IMG/VR virus record: IMGVR_UViG_3300032334_002567 | Location: 248,001 to 312,000 of that record | DNA length: 64,000 nucleotides | Direction: 5' to 3' (one strand) | Shown: positions 24,380 to 45,907 of the stretch, piece after piece | Numbering within the stretch: the stretch's first letter is position 1 | How the letters are laid out: the number at the start of each line of letters is the position of its first letter | Notes under the pieces: generated by a model | What the model saw: the letters and a program-made list of their open reading frames with translations, nothing else | Database searches by the model: none | Told to the model about the DNA's origin: nothing | Translations under genes and position numbers: made by a program

Positions 24380-25465
24380 ATGATTCCACAGGGTGAGTTG
24401 ATTTTCTGGGGGCCGAAGCATGAGGACAATCTTCCTATGCCTAGTAGGGAGGATAGGTTGAAGCGGGTGGACTCTGGCAATCCTTCTAGTCCGTTTAGCC
24501 GGTTCGTTGGTAATGAGCGGGCTGTTCGGAAGATGCAGGCTGCTGTGTATAGTGCGTTGGGCCGTCCGAATCATATCCAGCGTGATTTGGCGTTTGCCAT
24601 CTTTGGGCCTGCGTCTAGTGGCAAGACTACTTTGGCTCGGCTTTATGCTGATTCTGTAGAGTTGCCGTTGGTGGAGGTTAGTCCCAAGAGTATTCGGACT
24701 ACGGATGATCTTTTGGAGTTCATTCGTGCGACTTTGCTGGAGACAGAGGTTCCGTTGGTGGATTGTGGTACGGATCAGTTTGTGTTGCCTCCGATGGTGG
24801 TGTTTATTGACGAGGTTCATGCACTGAGTCGTTCGGTGGTGGATGGTCTGTTGAAGGCTACGGAATATAAGGATGCCATTCTTGTGACGGACGGTGGTTC
24901 AACCGTTGACTGTCATAACGTGACATGGATGATTGCGACAACGGATGAGGGTCGGTTGTTTGATGCGTTCCGTACTCGTTTTAGCCCGATTATGTTGCAG
25001 TATTTGACTAAGGCCGAAGTGGCGAAGATTGTTAGCATGGCTCATAAGGATTTGCCTTCTGAGGTGTGTATGTTGGTGGCTCACTATAACAGTCGGATTC
25101 CCCGTAAGGCTTTGGAGTTTGCTAGGTACATGAAGATGGTTCGTGATATGCACCCTGAGATGACTTGGGAGGACGTTGCCCGTCAGGTTGCTGGTGATGA
25201 GGGGATTGACGAGTATGGGATGCAGGAGCTTCATTTGAAGGTCTTGCGGGCTTTGGGTCAGGGGCCGGTTGCTCGTAATCGTATAAGTTTGGTTGTGGGC
25301 AGGAAGATTGAGGAAGTGGAGCGGTACATCATGCCGTGGCTGTTGAGTGAGACAGAGGATCAGCCTGCGATGGTTACTGTGTCGAGCAAGGGCTATGTGA
25401 TTACTAGGGCTGGGCTTGACGAATTGGAGAAACGTGGTATAAGCTATGTGGCTGAAGCTGCGTGA
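24380..25465 (+). CDS. ruvB: RuvB-like Holliday junction branch migration AAA+ ATPase
   Basis: F..FVGN, GPASSGKTTLA (Walker A), FIDEVHAL (Walker B), ATT..G.L..AFRTRF, PR.A, GID..G...GP...E.Y..P.L C-terminal winged helix; AGGAGG RBS before ATG 24380. Confidence 0.8.
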   Translation: MIPQGELIFWGPKHEDNLPMPSREDRLKRVDSGNPSSPFSRFVGNERAVRKMQAAVYSALGRPNHIQRDLAFAIFGPASSGKTTLARLYADSVELPLVEVSPKSIRTTDDLLEFIRATLLETEVPLVDCGTDQFVLPPMVVFIDEVHALSRSVVDGLLKATEYKDAILVTDGGSTVDCHNVTWMIATTDEGRLFDAFRTRFSPIMLQYLTKAEVAKIVSMAHKDLPSEVCMLVAHYNSRIPRKALEFARYMKMVRDMHPEMTWEDVARQVAGDEGIDEYGMQELHLKVLRALGQGPVARNRISLVVGRKIEEVERYIMPWLLSETEDQPAMVTVSSKGYVITRAGLDELEKRGISYVAEAA

Positions 25466-26198
25466 ACCAATAAGTTCGATTTTGCACACTGAAGAAGTGA
25501 ACCACTTCCATAGATTTAGCAAGTTCTGTGAGTGAACCACTATAGGGAATTTTACACAAAGCCGTAGTGAACCTTGGATGATGATTTTATATTCGCACTG
25601 AGTGAACCATTAGAAGAGATTTTACATGCCCCACGAGTGAACCATTGAAGCCGATTTTACATGATGAAATAGTGAACCACGGTTTAGGATTTTACATTTT
25701 GACAGAGTGAACCAGCCTCGAAGATTTTACACTGAAGTTGAGTGAACCAGGGACCGGGATTTTACATGGGATCCACAGTGAACCAAGTGGTACGATCTTA
25801 CAGTCAAGAAGAGTGAACCATCAAAAGCAATTTTATAGCGACGTTGAGTGAACCAGACTTTCGGATTTTACATCACGACCGAGTGAACCATATCCGCTGA
25901 TTTAAATAACGGAAAAGAGTGAATCACGCAATACGATTTTTAACACAACGCCCGAGTGAACCAAGAAAACGGATTTCAACATAATCCGATAGTGAACCAT
26001 TGGGCATTTTTTTGCAATGAGAGCGAGTGAACCAAATAGATCGATTTTACATACCGTGCGAGTGAACCAGGGGAGAAGATTTTATAGGTTTGGAGAGTGA
26101 ACCGTGTAGATCGATTTAGCATACAGTTCGAGTGAACCAATTCTTCAGATTTTACATGATGAGTAAGTGAACCATAAATTTGATTTAGCATAAAGGAA
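25460..26198 (+). ncRNA. TIGR-like dual-repeat guide RNA array 1 (about 21 units of 35 nt)
   Basis: alternating (G)AGTGAACCA and GATTTTACA repeats separated by unique 8-nt spacers; edge repeats at 25460, 25495, 25530 ... 26130, 26165. Confidence 0.88.
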
Positions 26199-26209
26199 TT
26201 GTACCCTAT

Positions 26210-26539
26210 ATGGATGCTCGGGTAGCTTTGCATACCATGATGTTGGCACTTGGGCGTGAAGGAGCGACTCCGATGGTCAGGATGGAGTCTGGGTACAGTA
26301 TCAAGAACAACAAGTTCCTAAAAAGATTAAAGAAAAAGTTTAAGAGGCACGGGCCGTGCAGGGTTCCAGAATATGAAGATTATTTTCTTCTAAGTTCGGA
26401 ACCTTATTTTGTTTATAAATATGCGGAGATTATTGGTGCAAACAAAATGCCTGAGCCTTTGCATCGAAAGATGTTAAGTTTTGCTATTATGAATCCGAAT
26501 AATTATTATGTGAAGCGTTATTTAAGTCAAAGGAGTTGA
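26210..26539 (+). CDS. phage helical-repeat family protein
   Basis: C-terminal YA......MPE.LHRKML......NNYYVK.Y shared with paralogs. Confidence 0.6.
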   Translation: MDARVALHTMMLALGREGATPMVRMESGYSIKNNKFLKRLKKKFKRHGPCRVPEYEDYFLLSSEPYFVYKYAEIIGANKMPEPLHRKMLSFAIMNPNNYYVKRYLSQRS

Positions 26540-26543
26540 GAAG

Positions 26544-27377
26544 ATGCCTTACCAGCAAAGATTTTTGGTTTTGGATGGCAGCGAAACTTTTAATTATAAT
26601 AGGGCTTCTTCTGATGTTAAGAGTAAACAACCAGCGGCTAAGTTTTGTCCCATTCTTCTGAGTGTTCCAGATAATATCTTCTCAAATTGTAAAAACATTG
26701 AGGATCGTCTTGAAGATTGGGTGAAGAAGGTTTACGCCCAAAAGAATGAATTGCAGCTTTGGTCTGGACATATGTTGGTTGTAATGACAGAGGAGCAGTG
26801 TAGTTCTAATCATCAGATGAATCTTGTATTTAATAGTTATAATTGGAATAATGTTTTACCTTCTTGGCTGAATGTTCCTACTGATGCTACTACAGCAATT
26901 ACATTTGTTAAGGATGTTGGCGTTAATCTTCCTGAGTTTGAGCCTGTAATTAGTCAAGAATCAAAGACAAGTTACGAGTACGCTATTATCTTGAGGAAGA
27001 GATTTGAGATGGGAGAACCGGCTATTGCTAAGGATGCTGGTTTGAGTTGTCGTTATGCTAAGGAAATTATTGGTGGTAGGTTTTTGCTTGGAGAGCCTAC
27101 TATTGCCCAGCATGAACGTGCTGCTGACTTGTATGCTGAGAAGATCAGGGAGTGGCGTTTGTGGGGAGAGTTCAGTCATGAAACCCTGATGACGAGTCCG
27201 GTTTGGATGTATCATTATGCCAAGGATTTTTGTGGAGGTCGTTTGCCTGAGAATCTCCATAATCGGATGTTGATGATGAGTGTGATGGAACCGAATAATT
27301 ATTGGGTGAAGCGGTATAGTGCCAAGAAGTATCAGAAGAAGAAGCGGGCGCCAAAAGCTAATTTAGAAAATGCTTGA
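26544..27377 (+). CDS. phage helical-repeat family protein
   Basis: YA..I...RF..GEP.IA repeats; GRLPENLHNRML...NYWVK. Confidence 0.75.
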   Translation: MPYQQRFLVLDGSETFNYNRASSDVKSKQPAAKFCPILLSVPDNIFSNCKNIEDRLEDWVKKVYAQKNELQLWSGHMLVVMTEEQCSSNHQMNLVFNSYNWNNVLPSWLNVPTDATTAITFVKDVGVNLPEFEPVISQESKTSYEYAIILRKRFEMGEPAIAKDAGLSCRYAKEIIGGRFLLGEPTIAQHERAADLYAEKIREWRLWGEFSHETLMTSPVWMYHYAKDFCGGRLPENLHNRMLMMSVMEPNNYWVKRYSAKKYQKKKRAPKANLENA

Positions 27378-27401
27378 CAAGTCTATTATCTGTGGTATAA
27401 T
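27374..27401 (+). promoter_or_regulatory. strong sigma70-type promoter of array 2
   Basis: TTGACA-16 bp-TATAAT with extended TGn. Confidence 0.85.
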
Positions 27402-27407
27402 GGTTTT

Positions 27408-27555
27408 AACCAAGGTAGTCGATTTTTTAAGTTCAAATAGTGAACCATATTGCCGGATTTTATATCAGGCTGAAGTGAACCATAGCAAAGGATTTTGCAT
27501 CGGCTGAAGAGTGAACCATCGCCCAGTGATTTCAACAAGATCAACAAGTGAATCA
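27408..27555 (+). ncRNA. TIGR-like array 2 (about 4 units)
   Basis: AACCA-aggtagtc-GATTTTTTA-agttcaaa-TAGTGAACCA-tattgccg-GATTTTATA-tcaggctg-AAGTGAACCA-tagcaaag-GATTTTGCA-tcggctgaa-GAGTGAACCA-tcgcccagt-GATTTCAACA-agatcaac-AAGTGAATCA. Confidence 0.85.
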
Positions 27556-28085
27556 TGAATCTGAAGTTTGGCATTAAACCGAGTGACGACGATTGGACGG
27601 CAGAAAAAGAGCTTTCTTATAAAGCTGCTAAGGCTGCTTTTCAAAAGTTTTTTAATGGTGAAAAATTAAGTCGTGAATTAGAGAAGATTATTGCGTCAGA
27701 CGCTACTTGGAGCTGTCAGTATGCTGCTGCATTAAAGGATAGGTTTATACTGGGCGAACCTATTATTGCTTCTAAAGCGAGAACAGCAGGTTGGTATGCT
27801 CGTCATATTATCCGGGGTCCGTGGCCTGAAGGCGAGTCTGGAATATCCCAAAGTGCATATTTCGTATGTGCATATATTTGTGATGTTTTAAACGGGAGCA
27901 GGGTATCTGATTTAATTCACAGAAATATGTTGGCTTTGCTTATAGAAAACCCATCAGATTATTGGGTGCTTGAATATATGCACTATAGAGAATGGCTTGA
28001 TGGTCACGTTGCAGAGCCTAGTTGGGTTCGTCAGGGAAATTGGAATTATGGCGGGGTTACGCAAGAATATTTAAATTCGAATTAG
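27555..28085 (+). CDS. phage helical-repeat family protein
   Basis: YA..L..RF.LGEP.IA, YA..II.GPWPEGE, IHRNML...DYWV. Confidence 0.75.
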   Translation: MNLKFGIKPSDDDWTAEKELSYKAAKAAFQKFFNGEKLSRELEKIIASDATWSCQYAAALKDRFILGEPIIASKARTAGWYARHIIRGPWPEGESGISQSAYFVCAYICDVLNGSRVSDLIHRNMLALLIENPSDYWVLEYMHYREWLDGHVAEPSWVRQGNWNYGGVTQEYLNSN

Positions 28086-28130
28086 GGCAAATGAATTGTA
28101 CCCTATGAAGTTATCGAAAGGAGATTTCTG

Positions 28131-28850
28131 ATGGACATTCTCACTGATAATTGGGTTCAAGTATTCCCTAATATGCTGCATTATGCTTCTAGGACTGGTG
28201 GGCGGGTTCCTGAATTTGAGCCGCTGTTTATTCAGGATGCTGATGCTGCTTCTAGCTATGCAGCTGGATCTATTCATGGGCGTTGGCCAGAAGCAGAAGA
28301 AATTATAGCTACTAATTCTGGTGCTGCTCTTAATTATGCCCGTAAAGTAATTGCGGGTAAGTGGGAACCCGGAGAGGCTGCTATTGCTACTAATCCTAAA
28401 GATAGCTACTGGTATGCCACTTATGTTCTCAAAGGCAGCTTCCCAGAAGGCGAAGCGGAAATTGCTAAACATCCTGACCTTAGTTTTGATTATGCAAGAA
28501 ATGTGATTTATGGTCGGTTTATTGCTGGTGAAGCTGAGATTGGCAAGTTAGAAGTCACTGGCTTTAATCCCAAGATGGCTTTAGATTATATGAATCTTTG
28601 GGTGAAGGGTAATTGGTCGGGTTGGACTGAAGATCAGATTCGTGTGTGTCCTTGTTGGCTGTATAACTATGCCAAGCAGCATTGTAAGGGTAGGCTTCCA
28701 GATAATCTTCATAATGCTATGCTGACATTTGGCATGACAATTAATGAGAATTATTGGGTGAAGAAGTATTTTAAGGCTGCGAAGTACCAGAAGAAGATTA
28801 AGCGGCGCAATCCACCGGAGATGGCTGCTCCTATTGTTATCCCTGATTAA
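28131..28850 (+). CDS. phage helical-repeat family protein
   Basis: four ~23-aa YA..V..G.W.E.E..IA repeats; GRLPDNLHNAML...NYWVK. Confidence 0.8.
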   Translation: MDILTDNWVQVFPNMLHYASRTGGRVPEFEPLFIQDADAASSYAAGSIHGRWPEAEEIIATNSGAALNYARKVIAGKWEPGEAAIATNPKDSYWYATYVLKGSFPEGEAEIAKHPDLSFDYARNVIYGRFIAGEAEIGKLEVTGFNPKMALDYMNLWVKGNWSGWTEDQIRVCPCWLYNYAKQHCKGRLPDNLHNAMLTFGMTINENYWVKKYFKAAKYQKKIKRRNPPEMAAPIVIPD

Positions 28851-28860
28851 GGAGTATTTT

Positions 28861-29046
28861 ATGAATCTATCCCCTCGGCAGTCTTTAGTTCTTAAGGCAA
28901 TTTTGGTTTATGTGGACAAAGATTTGAGTAATATCAATGATTTCTTCACCCAGTTTGACGGGGCATTTGTAGTTAATGGTGAAGACACTCAGCCCATTGA
29001 AGAATCTGAGATTATTGAGCTTTGGAGTTTAGCGGGTGGAAACTGA
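28861..29046 (+). CDS. hypothetical protein
   Basis: AAGGAG RBS before ATG 28861. Confidence 0.6.
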   Translation: MNLSPRQSLVLKAILVYVDKDLSNINDFFTQFDGAFVVNGEDTQPIEESEIIELWSLAGGN

Positions 29047-29539
29047 AAAAGTTATTTTTGATAATGACGAACATTCTATAACGGTTAAACCCGTTACGTT
29101 AATTTTCAATAATACTTATGGGGAGAGTGTATATCCTGAACGGGTAATGATTGATTCAAATATGACTTTGGATCATTTTAAAACCCTAAAGGAGATTGAT
29201 CCTTATACGGCTGCTTTTTTTAAATTTGTTGTGGATGATTATCCTCATCCTGTGATGAAGAGTTTTCTTGAGAAGTCGGCAATTGGATGTCGTCATTTAA
29301 TTGGATTGTTTTCTTTGAGCTTGGAGCTGCTGAGTCAACAGAAAAAGTTCGGTTGGAAGTATCCAGAGGCTAATCTTCATCCTAGACAACAGTTAAATTT
29401 AGCAGATGCTTTGATTGTTTTTGGGCAACCAGAGCGATTTGTTAAATTGGTGAAATATGTGCAAGCTGGGTTCTTTGACCAGTATCAAATGTGTGCAAAA
29501 GAATCTTGGCGTGATGAAGCGTTCAGGGTGATGTCTTGA
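29036..29539 (+). CDS. hypothetical protein
   Basis: 167-aa ORF, GGAG RBS. Confidence 0.65.
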   Translation: METEKVIFDNDEHSITVKPVTLIFNNTYGESVYPERVMIDSNMTLDHFKTLKEIDPYTAAFFKFVVDDYPHPVMKSFLEKSAIGCRHLIGLFSLSLELLSQQKKFGWKYPEANLHPRQQLNLADALIVFGQPERFVKLVKYVQAGFFDQYQMCAKESWRDEAFRVMS

Positions 29540-29563
29540 CATTAGTGTTTTCTGTGGTATACT
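29536..29563 (+). promoter_or_regulatory. sigma70-type promoter of the putative sRNA
   Basis: TTGACA-16 bp-TATACT with extended TGn. Confidence 0.8.
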
Positions 29564-29569
29564 GATCGG

Positions 29570-29766
29570 GCCGATCAAAACTTACCGTGCTTGTGCTGCT
29601 ATGGCATCCAGCAGAAACGGTGACTCAGCGGAAGGTAGTCGGCTGATCTGCCCGTAAGACTCCGGGCAGTTAGCTAAACGTCCGCAGTTCATAACACATT
29701 CACCCTCCGTCCTTTCTAATGTGTGTATGAATAGGTCTGCCTCCTCAAAAGAGGCAGACTTTTTTT
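29570..29766 (+). ncRNA. putative ~200-nt structured small RNA
   Basis: lies between a promoter and an intrinsic terminator, no convincing ORF; helices ACCGT/ACGGT, CTGCT/AGCAG, GCGGA/TCCGC, CTGCCCG/CGGGCAG, TTCATAACACATT/AATGTGTGTATGAA. Confidence 0.7.
29735..29766 (+). terminator. intrinsic terminator
   Basis: GTCTGCCTC-ctcaaaa-GAGGCAGAC followed by T7. Confidence 0.85.
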
Positions 29767-29809
29767 GTACCCTATAGTTTTGTGTTCTCAACTTTTTAGG
29801 AGCTAAACC

Positions 29810-29965
29810 ATGGCTAAGGATGATAAGCCCCAGTTCGATCCTGATAGTGATGATGAGTATGACTATCTCAAGGAGAATTGGGAACCGGGTGATGAGCCTA
29901 TGAATGATCGTCAGCGTCGTGAAAATGAACAGTTGGATGAAGAGTACCGTCGTAACAAGTTTTAA
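29810..29965 (+). CDS. small acidic protein (51 aa)
   Basis: AGGAG RBS; MAKDDKPQFDPDSDDEYDYLKENWEPGDEPMNDRQRRENEQLDEEYRRNKF; below the ORF-track cutoff. Confidence 0.65.
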   Translation: MAKDDKPQFDPDSDDEYDYLKENWEPGDEPMNDRQRRENEQLDEEYRRNKF

Positions 29966-29986
29966 TTTTACAAAAGGAGTTTAACT

Positions 29987-30898
29987 ATGGGTAAGGCTAA
30001 GAAGGCGACTTTAAGTGAAGATGCAATTGAAGTTTTGAGTGGTCTTGGGGAGATTACTCGACTTGATAAAGATTTGAAAAAGCTAATTCGAACTTTGAAT
30101 CGTGATGAGGTTCGGTGCATTGTGAACTATTATTACAATGTGCAGGAGAACCGGATGAGGTCTTCTAAGCAGATTGATGCTGCCAGTAAGGCTGGTACTC
30201 CGCATGATCTGATGGTTTATCTGAATGCCCAAACTCAAGTTTTGGAAAATCAGATTGCTAAGGCTATGGATGAGTGGACTGAGGGGCATCCTGTAGCTAA
30301 GGCTTTGAAGGACAATGTTTATGGTATTGGCCCGATTATTTCAGCGGGTCTGGTTGCTCATTTTGATATTCGTCGGGCTGCTACTGCTGGTGCATTCTGG
30401 CGATATGCTGGTCTTGACCCCACATCTGAGTGGAACAAGGGTGAGAAGCGGCCTTGGAATGCAGCTTTGAAAACTTTGTGTTGGAAGGTCGGCCAGAGTT
30501 TCATGAAGTTCTCTAATGCTACTGATAAAGATACCGGGGCAGCTAAGTGCTTTTACGGTGATCTTTATCGTCAGAAGAAGGCTGAATTGGTTGCTAAGAA
30601 TCAGGGTGGTGGATTTAAGGGTCTGGCGGATAGTGTGTTGAAGGCTAAGAAGTTTCGTGATGTCGCAACTAAAGCAAAATATGAATCAGGGATGCTTCCT
30701 GATGGTCATATTGATGCTATGGCTCGTCGCTGGGCTGTGAAGCTGTTTCTGAGTAATCTGCATGAACTTTGGTGTGCAGCAGAGGGAATTCCGTGTCCTC
30801 GGCCTTATTCGATGGCGATTCAGGGCCATGCTCATTACATCATGCAGCCTGAACTGGCTGATTTGATTAATGTTTGGAAGAATGAAGCTAGGATTTAA
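29987..30898 (+). CDS. TasA-like Nop-domain RNA-binding protein (IS110/IS116 C-terminal fold, no nuclease domain)
   Basis: coiled-coil then YGIGPIISAGLVAHFDI.R..T.GAFWRYAGLDP...G.K..WN..LK..C, Y..LY...K, H....A.R.AVKLFL..L...W; no DEDD RuvC or HNH; dual-repeat arrays nearby. Confidence 0.82.
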   Translation: MGKAKKATLSEDAIEVLSGLGEITRLDKDLKKLIRTLNRDEVRCIVNYYYNVQENRMRSSKQIDAASKAGTPHDLMVYLNAQTQVLENQIAKAMDEWTEGHPVAKALKDNVYGIGPIISAGLVAHFDIRRAATAGAFWRYAGLDPTSEWNKGEKRPWNAALKTLCWKVGQSFMKFSNATDKDTGAAKCFYGDLYRQKKAELVAKNQGGGFKGLADSVLKAKKFRDVATKAKYESGMLPDGHIDAMARRWAVKLFLSNLHELWCAAEGIPCPRPYSMAIQGHAHYIMQPELADLINVWKNEARI

Positions 30899-31116
30899 TG
30901 AATAAAGAAAACGTCAAGTTGCTCCAATGCTTGATTGATAAAGTTGTTCTTGAGCAGGAATGTATCGAGCAGAGAATTAAGAATGGTACTGTCGAGGAAT
31001 CTGCCACAAATGATGAAGTTGTGGCTTTAGCAAAAGGTTTAATTGCTGATATTACACGGGTCAAAAGAATCATACATATGCTAGAAGATGTCAAAAGTAT
31101 GTGTAGATTAACTTAG
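30898..31116 (+). CDS. hypothetical protein translationally coupled to the TasA-like gene
   Basis: TAATG overlap. Confidence 0.6.
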   Translation: MNKENVKLLQCLIDKVVLEQECIEQRIKNGTVEESATNDEVVALAKGLIADITRVKRIIHMLEDVKSMCRLT

Positions 31117-31118
31117 AT

Positions 31119-31213
31119 TTGACGTAAGTTCTTTTGAATAAAGAACTTACGTCAACAGACTTTTTGCCATTTGACGTAAGTGCAGTCTAACAAACGACTT
31201 ACGTCAAATGGCT
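31119..31213. repeat. two tandem inverted repeats with TTGACGTAAGT/ACTTACGTCAA arms
   Basis: TTGACGTAAGTTCTTT-tgaat-AAAGAACTTACGTCAA and GCCATTTGACGTAAGT...ACTTACGTCAAATGGC. Confidence 0.85.
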
Positions 31214-31397
31214 GAAGTTTTGTGTTCGAGGTGATTTGTCATTGTTTTTTTACACCCAGGGCGATGGTATTTGTCATTGTTTTATGAACCCAATAATTTT
31301 TGGGTCGGTCTAATTTTAAAATAGATTGTGGTATACTTAGGGTCACATAAAAAAATTGTACCCTATGAATTTGTTGTCTACTTAAAAGGGAAAAAAG

Positions 31398-45638: not shown

Positions 45639-45907
45639 GGAAGCGTAGCTCAGTTGGTAGAGCATCGGACTTCAAATAGGAGTGCTTATCGGGAAACTGA
45701 TAAAGTAGAACTGCTCAAATTCGGTGAACGCTTAACTGCCAATACCGAGCCAAGCCTAGAAATAGGAAGGTGTAGAGACTTGACGGGCAGCACCTAAAGT
45801 TGAAAAACAATGGTGAAGGTAAAGTCCAGACCACAAACAGAAATGGTAACGAAAGTTATAGTGGTAAGTTAATCCGTTGGTCCTGGGTTCGAGTCCCAGC
45901 GCTTCCA
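45639..45907 (+). tRNA. tRNA-Lys(UUU) interrupted by a group I intron (exons 45639-45672 and 45869-45907)
   Basis: GGAAGCG/CGCTTCC acceptor; spliced loop CT-TTT-AA; T arm CTGGG-TTCGAGT-CCCAG. Confidence 0.85.
45673..45868 (+). ncRNA. self-splicing group I intron (IC3-like), 196 nt, no ORF
   Basis: P1 ACTTC/GGAGT with U.G at the 5' splice site; CAAATTCGGTGAA, ATACCGAGCCAAG, GTGTAGAGACTTGACGG and AAGGTAAAGTCC core elements; terminal G. Confidence 0.85.

What the first reader, a model, noticed from the sequence alone, without database searches (positions are those of the whole stretch)
27374..27555. Second mini-array has its own promoter, and the predicted start site suggests the guide 5' end
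Seen: TTGACA-16bp-TATAAT (27374-27401). Seven nt downstream the sequence begins AACCA, which is only the 3' half of the edge repeat, followed by four units. The last edge repeat overlaps the ATG of the gene at 27555. Inference: transcription starting at A27408 would give a first guide beginning AACCA. This predicts that the other units are processed at GAGTG|AACCA, giving AACCA-N8-GATTTTACA-N8-GAGTG.
Basis: partly seen in the sequence, partly recalled or inferred. Interest (0 to 1): 0.75.

Follow-up and report, generated by a model that had tools for sequence, protein, structure and literature searches.

The report
Promoter-driven TIGR guide mini-array in phage
A four-guide TIGR array (a known kind of phage guide-RNA array) in a freshwater jumbo phage has its own conserved bacterial-type promoter, placed so that transcription should begin exactly where the first mature guide RNA begins.

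Summary
TTGACA-16-TGgTATAAT lies at 27374-27401. Six bases later, at A27408, four 35-37-nt units begin (27408-27550). The last edge repeat (27546-27555) shares its final A with the ATG of a 176-aa ORF.

The feature is a dual-repeat TIGR array (Faure 2025). Its Tas protein is at 29987-30898. It matches solved TasR and TasH by sequence and fold, shows no nuclease domain (TasA-like), and keeps the Tyr/His pair that processes guides in SpTasH.

Six distinct versions of the orthologous region, from eight related metagenome contigs, keep both hexamers, the TG and both spacings. All seven variable sites fall in the promoter spacer and in the six bases before AACCA. One lineage has a different upstream gene but the same promoter.

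The predicted cut GAGUG|AACCA corresponds position for position to the ends of the mature-form guides synthesised in the original study (AAGCG|AGCCA in SpTasH, UGCG|AGCCA in TaTasR).

No RNA data could be found, so the start site and the RNA ends remain inferences. [quoted passage not shown] What is new is a well-supported native promoter whose start site replaces the first cut. This is a new member of a known kind, of moderate interest.

The parts
27351..27373 (+). A/T-rich block upstream of the -35, UP-element-like. It is coding in the window (C-terminus of ORF 26544-27377).
   Evidence: One variable site (27357 G/T) across the six versions. It is kept in L030/L031, where a different upstream ORF ends earlier and the block is non-coding. 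UP-element function is an inference.
27374..27379 (+). -35 hexamer TTGACA. It overlaps the TGA stop codon (27375-27377) of ORF 26544-27377.
   Evidence: Invariant in all relatives, including those where it is not under coding constraint.
27380..27395 (+). 16-nt promoter spacer ending in TGG (extended -10 TG at 27393-27394).
   Evidence: The length never changes. Four positions vary (27388, 27389, 27390, 27392). The TG is invariant.
27396..27401 (+). -10 hexamer TATAAT.
   Evidence: Invariant in all relatives.
27402..27407 (+). 6-nt discriminator (GGTTTT). It is not an edge-repeat half.
   Evidence: The letters vary (GGTTTT, GTTTTT, GTGTTT, TTGTTT) but the length is always 6.
27408..27408 (+). 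Predicted transcription start, equal to the predicted mature 5' end of guide 1.
   Evidence: It is the 7th base after the -10 and the first purine after a run of T. It is the first base of AACCA, which corresponds to the 5' AGCCA of the published SpTasH and TaTasR guides. Inferred, not measured.
27408..27442 (+). Unit 1 (35 nt): AACCA, spacer A AGGTAGTC, loop GATTTTTTA, spacer B AGTTCAAA, TAGTG.
   Evidence: Present in all relatives (spacer B differs by one base in L032/L033), with small changes in the loop.
27443..27477 (+). Unit 2 (35 nt): spacers TATTGCCG / TCAGGCTG.
   Evidence: Spacers identical in all relatives.
27478..27513 (+). Unit 3 (36 nt): spacers TAGCAAAG / TCGGCTGAA.
   Evidence: This is the variable inner slot: relatives carry 1 to 3 other units here, giving arrays of 4, 5 or 6 units.
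27514..27550 (+). Unit 4 (37 nt): spacers TCGCCCAGT / AGATCAAC, with a longer loop GATTTCAACA.
   Evidence: Spacers identical in all relatives; one loop base differs (C/T).
27546..27555 (+). Terminal edge repeat AAGTGAATCA. Its last A is the A of the ATG at 27555. The predicted cut would leave an mRNA starting AAUCAUG.
   Evidence: The same junction is present in all relatives. No terminator follows.
27555..28085 (+). 176-aa ORF that the same promoter would transcribe. All-helical, function unknown, paralogous to the neighbouring repeat proteins.
   Evidence: An intact ORF of 175-176 aa in a cluster of 10 sequences; its representative is 91% identical. No Pfam or PHROG hit. The single-sequence structure model is poor.
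25460..26169 (+). Main TIGR array of 20 units. Its first edge repeat GCGTGAACCA is nearly full length and overlaps the TGA stop (25463-25465) of the AAA+ gene.
   Evidence: It varies by whole units between strains.
29987..30898 (+). tas gene, TasA-like: coiled coil plus Nop domain, no nuclease domain detected. It is the only tas in the 381-kb record.
   Evidence: Sequence matches to solved structures: 9mty TasR 1.1e-11, TasH 5.5e-10. Model pLDDT 84, best folds TasR and TasH, then IS110 recombinases. Y274/H281 conserved. Single copy.

Best explanation
Window 27374-27555 is a separate four-guide TIGR array with its own transcription unit. It belongs to the TasA-type TIGR-Tas system of a 381-kb freshwater jumbo phage.

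Proposed mechanism:
1. Host RNA polymerase with its primary sigma factor uses the consensus promoter at 27374-27401 (extended -10, A/T-rich upstream block).
2. Transcription starts at A27408 (or one base either side), which is the first base of AACCA. Guide 1 is therefore born with its mature 5' end as a primary, triphosphorylated end. It needs no upstream half of an edge repeat and no 5' cut.
3. The transcript runs through four units into the 176-aa ORF.
4. The Tas dimer binds each unit and, through its conserved Tyr274/His281 loop, cuts every full edge repeat at GAGUG|AACCA.
5. This releases guides of 35-37 nt with the form AACCA, spacer A (8 nt, often followed by G), loop GAUUUUACA, spacer B (8 nt, often followed by G), AGUG.
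6. The last cut leaves an mRNA that begins AAUCAUG.
7. Without a nuclease domain, the guide-protein complex most likely binds DNA and blocks transcription rather than cutting.

Shown here: the array anatomy, Tas identity and fold, conservation of the processing residues, conservation of the promoter and its spacing, and the match to published guide ends.

Inferred: promoter use, the exact start site, the RNA ends and their chemistry, the fate of the downstream mRNA, and the DNA targets.
For: - Anatomy of the promoter and units.
- It is the only perfect sigma-70 match in the genome and has an extended -10.
- Six distinct versions of the orthologous region keep both hexamers, the TG, the 16-nt spacer and the 6-nt discriminator length. 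All 7 variable sites fall between them.
- The promoter block is kept behind a different upstream gene in L030/L031.
- The phage has three sigma-factor-like genes and no detected RNA polymerase gene (Rpb2-type or T7-type). One of those sigma genes has a similar TTGTCA-16-TGcTATAAT promoter. Host-type promoters are therefore plausible in this phage.
- Tas matches solved TasR and TasH by sequence and fold.
- Y274/H281 align with the SpTasH catalytic residues Y289/H296 and are invariant in 13 homologues.
- The guides that Faure et al. synthesised as mature tigRNAs start two bases before CCA, implying AAGCG|AGCCA and UGCG|AGCCA. The window edge repeat GAGUG|AACCA is the same position for position.
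- Faure et al. report that arrays need full edge repeats to be processed and that arrays typically begin with a truncated edge repeat.
- Their T7 templates add one G before AGCCA, and U6-driven 36-nt guides were used for editing in human cells, so unprocessed primary 5' ends appear to be tolerated.
- Internal contrast: the main array starts with a nearly full edge repeat (GCGTG|AACCA) and has no consensus promoter at that distance.
Against: - No transcript data exist: no RNA run was listed and only DNA contigs could be laid.
- The host is unknown, so use of TTGACA/TATAAT is inferred from conservation only (one search gave no close isolate).
- The start could be A27409 or elsewhere within 1-2 nt.
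- The promoter spacer is 16 nt rather than the optimal 17.
- The loop of unit 1 is off consensus (GATTTTTTA, and variable between strains), so guide 1 may bind poorly.
- There is no terminator after the array, so the promoter may mainly serve the downstream ORF.
- Read-through from the phage-type promoter at 26200 could also transcribe the array.
- No similarly placed -10 was seen before the arrays of more distant relatives, so this is not a general TIGR rule.
Confidence: 0.62

Rival explanations
1. The promoter is real but exists for the 176-aa ORF, and perhaps the genes after it. The four units are then a 5' leader, either a decaying array remnant or a translation signal. The match between start site and AACCA would have no role in guide biogenesis.
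For: No terminator separates the array from the ORF, and the last edge repeat is fused to the ATG. The ORF has no Shine-Dalgarno sequence of its own. Units 3 and 4 have off-consensus lengths. Promoter, array and ORF travel together as one block in L030/L031.
Against: The repeats are kept intact and inner units are exchanged as whole 35-36-nt units between strains, as in the main array. The distance from the -10 to AACCA is fixed at 6 nt while the letters change, which a mere leader would not require. The two readings are not exclusive, since one transcript can serve both.
Confidence: 0.2
2. The mini-array is mostly transcribed by read-through from upstream phage-type promoters (aatTGTACCCTa at 26200). 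The 5' end of guide 1 would then be made by trimming back to the Tas-protected boundary. The sigma-70-like site would add little.
For: This region of the genome has dozens of phage-type promoters, all on the + strand. No terminator was found between 26200 and 27374. In the Salicola phage, guide 1 also lacks an upstream half edge repeat and has no consensus promoter.
Against: The hexamers, the TG and both spacings are invariant while the bases between them vary. The -35 is conserved even where it is not coding (L030/L031). A sister promoter with the same CTTGACA...TGTGGTATA frame at 29536 drives a terminated small RNA.
Confidence: 0.12
3. The promoter-like sequence is a chance match in A/T-rich DNA.
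For: One perfect 12/12 match per 381 kb is about what base composition predicts (0.79 expected).
Against: The expectation at this particular position is about 4e-6. An extended -10 TG is present. Functional positions are selectively conserved across six versions (p = 0.014).
Confidence: 0.03

Closest known systems
Dual-repeat TIGR-Tas system of Salicola phage CGphi29 (SpTIGR/SpTasH; Faure et al. 2025, PMC12045711; NAR 2026, PMC13421893)
   Same: - Alternating edge and loop repeats with 8-nt variable spacers, each followed by one semi-conserved base.
- The edge repeats correspond position for position: (A)AGCG|AGCCA there, (G)AGUG|AACCA here.
- The first unit lacks the 5' half of the edge repeat.
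- The Nop-domain protein carries the Tyr/His processing pair.
- Both are phage-borne.
   Different: - The protein here has no HNH domain (TasA-like).
- Units are 35 nt, not 36, because the loop repeat is one base shorter and lacks a clear CCA (GAUUUUACA).
- There are three separate array loci (20, 4 and 1 units).
- The mini-array has its own consensus promoter and no terminator.
- Arrays sit flush against neighbouring ORFs.
Nuclease-free TasA systems (FpTasA, PlTasA, MbTasA; bioRxiv 10.64898/2026.09.09.750476 and 10.64898/2026.08.11.744272)
   Same: A Nop-only Tas protein of about 300 aa. The papers report guide-dependent DNA binding and transcriptional repression, which is the most likely activity here.
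   Different: DNA binding and repression have not been tested for this protein. MbTasA belongs to the stem-loop class, whereas this is a dual-repeat system with the Y/H loop. No natural target was found here.
Type II-C CRISPR arrays of Neisseria and Campylobacter, where promoters inside the repeats set the crRNA 5' ends (from my own knowledge: Zhang et al. 2013; Dugar et al. 2013)
   Same: The 5' end of a guide is defined by transcription initiation rather than by nuclease processing.
   Different: In those arrays every repeat carries a promoter. Here only the first unit is promoter-defined and the rest are expected to be cut by Tas. The protein family and guide architecture are unrelated.
Archaeal and eukaryotic box C/D sRNPs (Nop5/Nop56/58) and IS110 bridge-RNA recombinases
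   Same: A Nop-type RNA-binding fold and two-part guides flanked by box C/D-like motifs. The IS110 recombinases IS621 and ISCro4 are the next-best fold matches after TasR and TasH.
   Different: No methyltransferase or L7Ae partner and no DEDD/RuvC or Tnp domain. Guides come from a tandem array.

Membership tests
TIGR array (dual-repeat class) | Two distinct alternating repeats of 8-12 nt separated by two spacers of about 9 nt, repeated in tandem with a 35-36-nt period | tested here: met
   Edge repeat (G)AGTGAACCA, loop repeat GATTTTACA, variable positions 6-13 and 23-30, period 35-37 nt. There are 20 + 4 + 1 units in the genome.
TIGR array (dual-repeat class) | Both repeats carry box D (UG/AG) at the start and box C (CCA) at the end | tested here: inconclusive
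   The edge repeat has AG/UG ... CCA, as in SpTIGR. The loop repeat GAUUUUACA ends in ACA, not CCA, and starts with GA. Faure et al. note that these motifs can diverge.
TIGR array (dual-repeat class) | Adjacent gene for a Nop-domain Tas protein | tested here: met
   The ORF at 29987-30898 lies 2.4 kb downstream on the same strand. Sequence matches to solved TasR (1.1e-11) and TasH (5.5e-10). Fold matches to TasR and TasH rank first.
TIGR array (dual-repeat class) | [quoted passage not shown] | tested here: met
   The mini-array starts GGTTTT|AACCA. The main array differs: it has a nearly full first edge repeat, GCGTGAACCA.
TIGR array (dual-repeat class) | [quoted passage not shown] | tested here: not met
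   The last edge repeat is full length (AAGTGAATCA) and fused to an ATG, and no terminator follows. The paper describes this feature as 'typical', not obligatory.
TIGR array (dual-repeat class) | Transcribed and processed into guides of about 36 nt that start and end in the middle of edge repeats | not testable with these tools
   No RNA run was listed. Supported only by positional correspondence with the published SpTasH and TaTasR guides.
Self-processing dual-repeat Tas | Tyr/His catalytic pair on a flexible loop at the C-terminal end of the Nop domain (SpTasH Y289/H296) | tested here: met
   Y274 and H281 align with them. They are invariant in 13 homologues and lie in a low-confidence loop of the model. 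TaTasR, reported not to cut by itself, has W at the Tyr position.
TasA subtype | No HNH or RuvC nuclease domain N-terminal to the coiled coil and Nop domain | tested here: met
   No nuclease domain by Pfam or PHROGs. The model is all-helical, with a helical hairpin at 39-99 followed by the Nop domain.
Sigma-70-type (primary sigma) promoter | -35 TTGACA, spacer of 16-18 nt, -10 TATAAT, optional TG, purine start about 7 nt downstream | tested here: met
   12/12 match with TG. The spacer is 16 nt and A is at +7 after a run of T.
Sigma-70-type (primary sigma) promoter | Functional positions conserved more than the bases between them | tested here: met
   0 of 14 functional positions vary, against 7 of 20 others, across six versions (p = 0.014).
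Sigma-70-type (primary sigma) promoter | Drives transcription in the host | not testable with these tools
   The host is unknown and no RNA data were available.

The most novel reading that the evidence does not exclude
In this clade of phage TIGR-Tas systems the arrays are built into mRNAs, so that Tas processing also decides the fate of the neighbouring genes.

- The first cut of the main array falls inside the UGA stop codon of the upstream gene (UG|A). The same geometry holds for the tas gene itself in L005, and probably in L009. This would leave a message without a stop codon.
- The last cut frees an almost leaderless mRNA for the next gene (AAUCAUG here).
- The mini-array would then be a host-sigma-driven cassette, possibly expressed early. 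Its first guide needs no processing, while its last cut switches the downstream repeat-protein gene on or off, depending on whether Tas is present.
Probability: 0.15. Interest if true: 0.7.

Novelty: new member of a known kind. Interest (0 to 1): 0.42.

Why it matters
TIGR-Tas systems were described in 2025. The field says openly that sequence alone has not shown whether arrays have their own promoters, and that start-site mapping is needed (Xu et al. 2026).

This locus offers an unusually clean natural case: a consensus promoter, conserved in relatives, with a fixed 6-nt distance to the first guide. It gives a specific, cheap test of how the first guide of an array gets its 5' end when the upstream half edge repeat is missing.

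If confirmed, three things follow:
- It would explain the published '5'-truncated first edge repeat' rule for at least some arrays.
- It would show that a guide with a primary, triphosphorylated 5' end is used naturally.
- It would suggest that different arrays of one phage are expressed by different sigma factors.

The strain-to-strain comparison also bears on how TIGR arrays gain and lose units, which is unknown.

Tried and rejected
- **RNA evidence.** No RNA run was listed for the mini-array and ORF. The nine runs that hold the region are DNA metagenomes. Laying four of them showed only strain variation and whole-unit gain and loss in the main array. The variant table was cut off before the mini-array.
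- **Targets in the phage's own genome.** I searched spacer A + 0-3 nt + reverse complement of spacer B, plus three control geometries. There was no hit with 1 mismatch or fewer in the expected geometry, and the 2-mismatch hits are at background level. I did not scan for host targets, because a 16-nt pattern would give hundreds of chance hits in the genome collection.
- **Nucleotide search of the phage collection.** No match.
- **First metagenome scan with the 176-aa protein.** Nothing found. The orthologues came from the protein-cluster route instead.
- **A similarly placed -10 before arrays of more distant relatives.** None seen in L004-L018, L020, L025, the Salicola phage or the Microcystis phage. 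Most of those arrays start on a stop codon.
- **A possible internal promoter before the main array** (TTGACG-16-TGgTATAAG, 25416-25443). It lacks the final T of the -10 and lies in conserved coding sequence, so it cannot be judged.
- **Spacer match to the nearby small RNA.** Spacer A of mini-array unit 1 (AGGTAGTC) also occurs in the small RNA at 29625-29632, with a 7/8 match to spacer B about 50 nt further on the same strand. This is the wrong geometry and shows no covariation in relatives, so I judge it chance.
- **Rfam.** Nothing relevant in 25300-31300.
- **Function of the neighbouring repeat proteins.** No Pfam or PHROG hit, only unnamed viral helical-repeat clusters in the protein atlas, and a poor single-sequence model.
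- **Host inference from a conserved protein.** No close isolate.

Full report
**Where the window comes from**

The window is bases 248001-312000 of a single 381,443-bp virus record with 36.5% G+C. Near-identical DNA occurs in freshwater and lake metagenomes. The record carries scattered tRNA genes and a group I intron. It has three sigma-factor-like genes and no detected RNA polymerase gene, whether Rpb2-type or T7-type. This is a jumbo phage that relies on the host polymerase.

**Check of the observation**

| Element | Coordinates |
|---|---|
| -35 TTGACA | 27374-27379 |
| 16-nt spacer ending TGG (extended -10 TG) | 27380-27395 |
| -10 TATAAT | 27396-27401 |
| GGTTTT | 27402-27407 |
| AACCA begins | 27408 |

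Four units follow, at 27408-27442, 27443-27477, 27478-27513 and 27514-27550. They are 35, 35, 36 and 37 nt long. The last edge repeat AAGTGAATCA (27546-27555) shares its final A with the ATG of a 176-aa ORF. The -35 overlaps the TGA stop codon of the upstream ORF (27375-27377).

The promoter is the best hit of the local scan and the only perfect 12/12 match in the whole record on either strand. One such match per genome is roughly what composition predicts (0.79 expected). What chance does not give is its position, about 4e-6 expected, or its conservation in relatives.

**What the repeats are**

The 35-nt period is shared with a 20-unit array at 25465-26169 and a solitary unit at genome position 171,247.

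- The edge repeat is (G)AGTGAACCA and the loop repeat is GATTTTACA.
- Positions 6-13 and 23-30 of a unit are fully variable.
- Positions 14 and 31 are semi-conserved G.

This is the architecture of dual-repeat TIGR arrays (Faure et al. 2025, PMC12045711).

The ORF at 29987-30898 (303 aa) is the associated Tas protein.

- By sequence it matches solved TasR (9mty, 1.1e-11) and Salicola phage TasH (5.5e-10).
- An alignment-based model (pLDDT 84) has TasR and TasH as its best folds, followed by IS110 recombinases.
- It is all-helical and shows no nuclease domain, so it is TasA-like.
- It is the only tas gene in the record.

**Is the promoter real?**

I found orthologues of the 176-aa ORF through its protein cluster, whose representative is 91% identical. 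I then fetched eight metagenome contigs that carry them, L026-L033. They give six distinct versions of the region.

- TTGACA, the TG and TATAAT never change in any version.
- The spacer is always 16 nt, and the -10 is always 6 nt from AACCA.
- All seven variable sites lie in the spacer (27388, 27389, 27390, 27392) or the discriminator (27402-27404).
- The probability that all seven miss the 14 functional positions is 0.014.
- In L030 and L031 a different ORF lies upstream and ends earlier, so the -35 and the A/T-rich block before it are non-coding there. They are still identical.

A sister promoter at 29536-29563 shares the CTTGACA...TGTGGTATA frame and is conserved in the same way. One of the phage's sigma-like genes also has a TTGTCA-16-TGcTATAAT promoter. 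I conclude that this is a working promoter for the host's primary sigma factor. That is an inference, since the host is unknown.

**Start site and guide ends**

The six bases after the -10 are G/T-rich and end in a run of T. The first suitably placed purine is A27408, at the 7th position and preceded by a pyrimidine. By established knowledge of bacterial start-site selection, this is the favoured arrangement.

The supplement of Faure et al. lists the guides the authors synthesised as mature tigRNAs after small-RNA sequencing:

- TaTasR: AGCCA-N9-UGAAACCCA-N9-UGCG
- SpTasH: AGCCA-N8-AAGACAACCA-N8-AAGCG

Mapped onto the native Salicola phage array, SpTasH guide 5 has AAGCG|AGCCA at both ends. 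Guide 1 starts at AGTCA with no half edge repeat before it.

The window's edge repeat lines up base for base: (G)AGUG|AACCA against (A)AGCG|AGCCA. The predicted start site coincides with the predicted mature 5' end.

The processing residues of SpTasH, Y289 and H296 (PMC13421893), align with Y274 and H281 here. These are invariant in 13 clade members. TaTasR, reported not to cut by itself, has W at the Tyr position.

Faure et al. report that minimal arrays are processed only if they have full edge repeats. A first unit without the upstream half would then need another way to get its 5' end, and a precisely placed promoter is such a way.

There is also an internal contrast. The main array begins with a nearly complete edge repeat (GCGTG|AACCA) and has no consensus promoter at that distance.

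The T7 templates of Faure et al. add one G before AGCCA, and U6-driven 36-nt guides were used for editing in human cells. Unprocessed primary 5' ends therefore appear to be tolerated.

**What is not shown**

No RNA run could be listed. The DNA runs I laid show only strain variation. The start site, the RNA ends and the end chemistry are therefore predictions.

No terminator follows the array, so the same promoter also transcribes the 176-aa ORF. A role mainly as that gene's promoter cannot be excluded and may coexist with guide production.

More distant relatives do not show a similarly placed -10. The arrangement is a property of this lineage, not a general TIGR rule.

No guide has a convincing target in the phage's own genome. 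The targets are unknown, as for most TIGR systems.

**Comparison with what is known**

This is a member of the known TIGR-Tas family, closest in guide format to the Salicola phage system but with a nuclease-free TasA-like protein. [quoted passage not shown]

What has not been described, as far as the library shows, is a native array promoter whose start site stands in for the first cut. Xu et al. (2026) state that sequence alone has not resolved whether arrays have separate promoters and call for start-site mapping. The nearest analogy outside the family is the promoter-defined crRNA 5' end of type II-C CRISPR arrays (from my own knowledge).

**Verdict**

This is a new member of a known kind with one new, testable detail, and the interest is moderate.

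Noticed in passing
window 29536-29768: A second host-type promoter (TTGACA-16-TGgTATACT) whose -35 again overlaps the TGA stop of the upstream ORF. It is followed by a structured non-coding RNA of about 200 nt (z = -4.8) and an intrinsic terminator at 29733-29761, just upstream of the small ORF and tas. There is no Rfam match. It is conserved in L026-L033, with hairpin insertions and deletions and one compensatory pair. Any link to the TIGR-Tas system is unknown.
   Followed up: partly
window 24339, 26200, 28097, 29766, 31357 and many more (genome 272-322 kb): A phage-specific promoter-like motif, aatTGTACCCTa. It occurs 78 times on the + strand and 6 times on the - strand, nearly always in the short gaps before genes. 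It is probably read by one of the three phage-encoded sigma-like factors. The tas operon and the AAA+ gene with the main array have this motif. In this locus only the mini-array and the small RNA have near-consensus host-type promoters.
   Followed up: partly
window 25460-25469; L005 6829-6842: The first edge repeat of the main array (GCGTGAACCA) contains the TGA stop codon of the upstream AAA+ (RuvB-like or clamp-loader-like) gene. The predicted Tas cut (UG|A) falls inside that stop codon. In L005 the stop codon of tas itself sits in the same position (GATTGAACCA). L009 looks the same, but its edge and loop repeats were not assigned. Processing could therefore leave these messages without a stop codon.
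   Followed up: partly
window 27546-27557; genome 171,277-171,294; L005 8484-8496; L007, L008, L014 array ends: Arrays of this Tas clade often end directly on or a few bases before the next start codon, without a Shine-Dalgarno sequence. Examples: AATCATG, AACCATAAAAATG, AACCAAAATG, CACCATG, CACCAATG, AACCATG. The last cut would give nearly leaderless mRNAs.
   Followed up: partly
window 25465-26169 and 27408-27550, compared with L026-L033: Between strains about 90% identical, both arrays keep their first and last units but differ in their inner units (main array 12-20 units, mini-array 4-6). Some units share one spacer with a different partner. L028 unit 3 (TATCCGAG / TCCAACAT) looks like a recombinant across the loop repeat of L026 units 3 and 5. 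This points to turnover by recombination between repeats, not addition at one end.
   Followed up: partly
window 25886-25921 and L005 8451-8486: One guide (spacers TATCCGCT / ACGGAAAA) is shared with a phage whose Tas is only about 62% identical. Some spacers are therefore old and conserved, which suggests conserved targets.
   Followed up: no
genome 171,212-171,294 (outside the window): A third TIGR locus: one canonical unit (spacers AAAGCAAA / TCACCACC) preceded by an irregular 42-nt unit. It lies directly after a terminator hairpin and directly before an ORF, about 100 kb from tas.
   Followed up: partly
window 26210-28850; L004/L006 4800-5150; L005 8902-10209: Four paralogous helical-repeat proteins (repeats of about 26 aa, with shared C-terminal motifs such as NYWVKRY) flank the arrays. 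Similar repeat proteins lie next to tas in related jumbo phages. There is no Pfam or PHROG match, only unnamed viral clusters.
   Followed up: partly
window 25416-25443: TTGACG-16-TGgTATAAG lies inside the 3' end of the AAA+ gene, about 21 nt before the main array. It resembles the two host-type promoters but lacks the final T of the -10. It sits in conserved coding sequence, so it cannot be judged.
   Followed up: no
window 45662-45849: Rfam match to a group I intron, just above threshold (52 bits; threshold 50). There are also six tRNA genes in the window.
   Followed up: no
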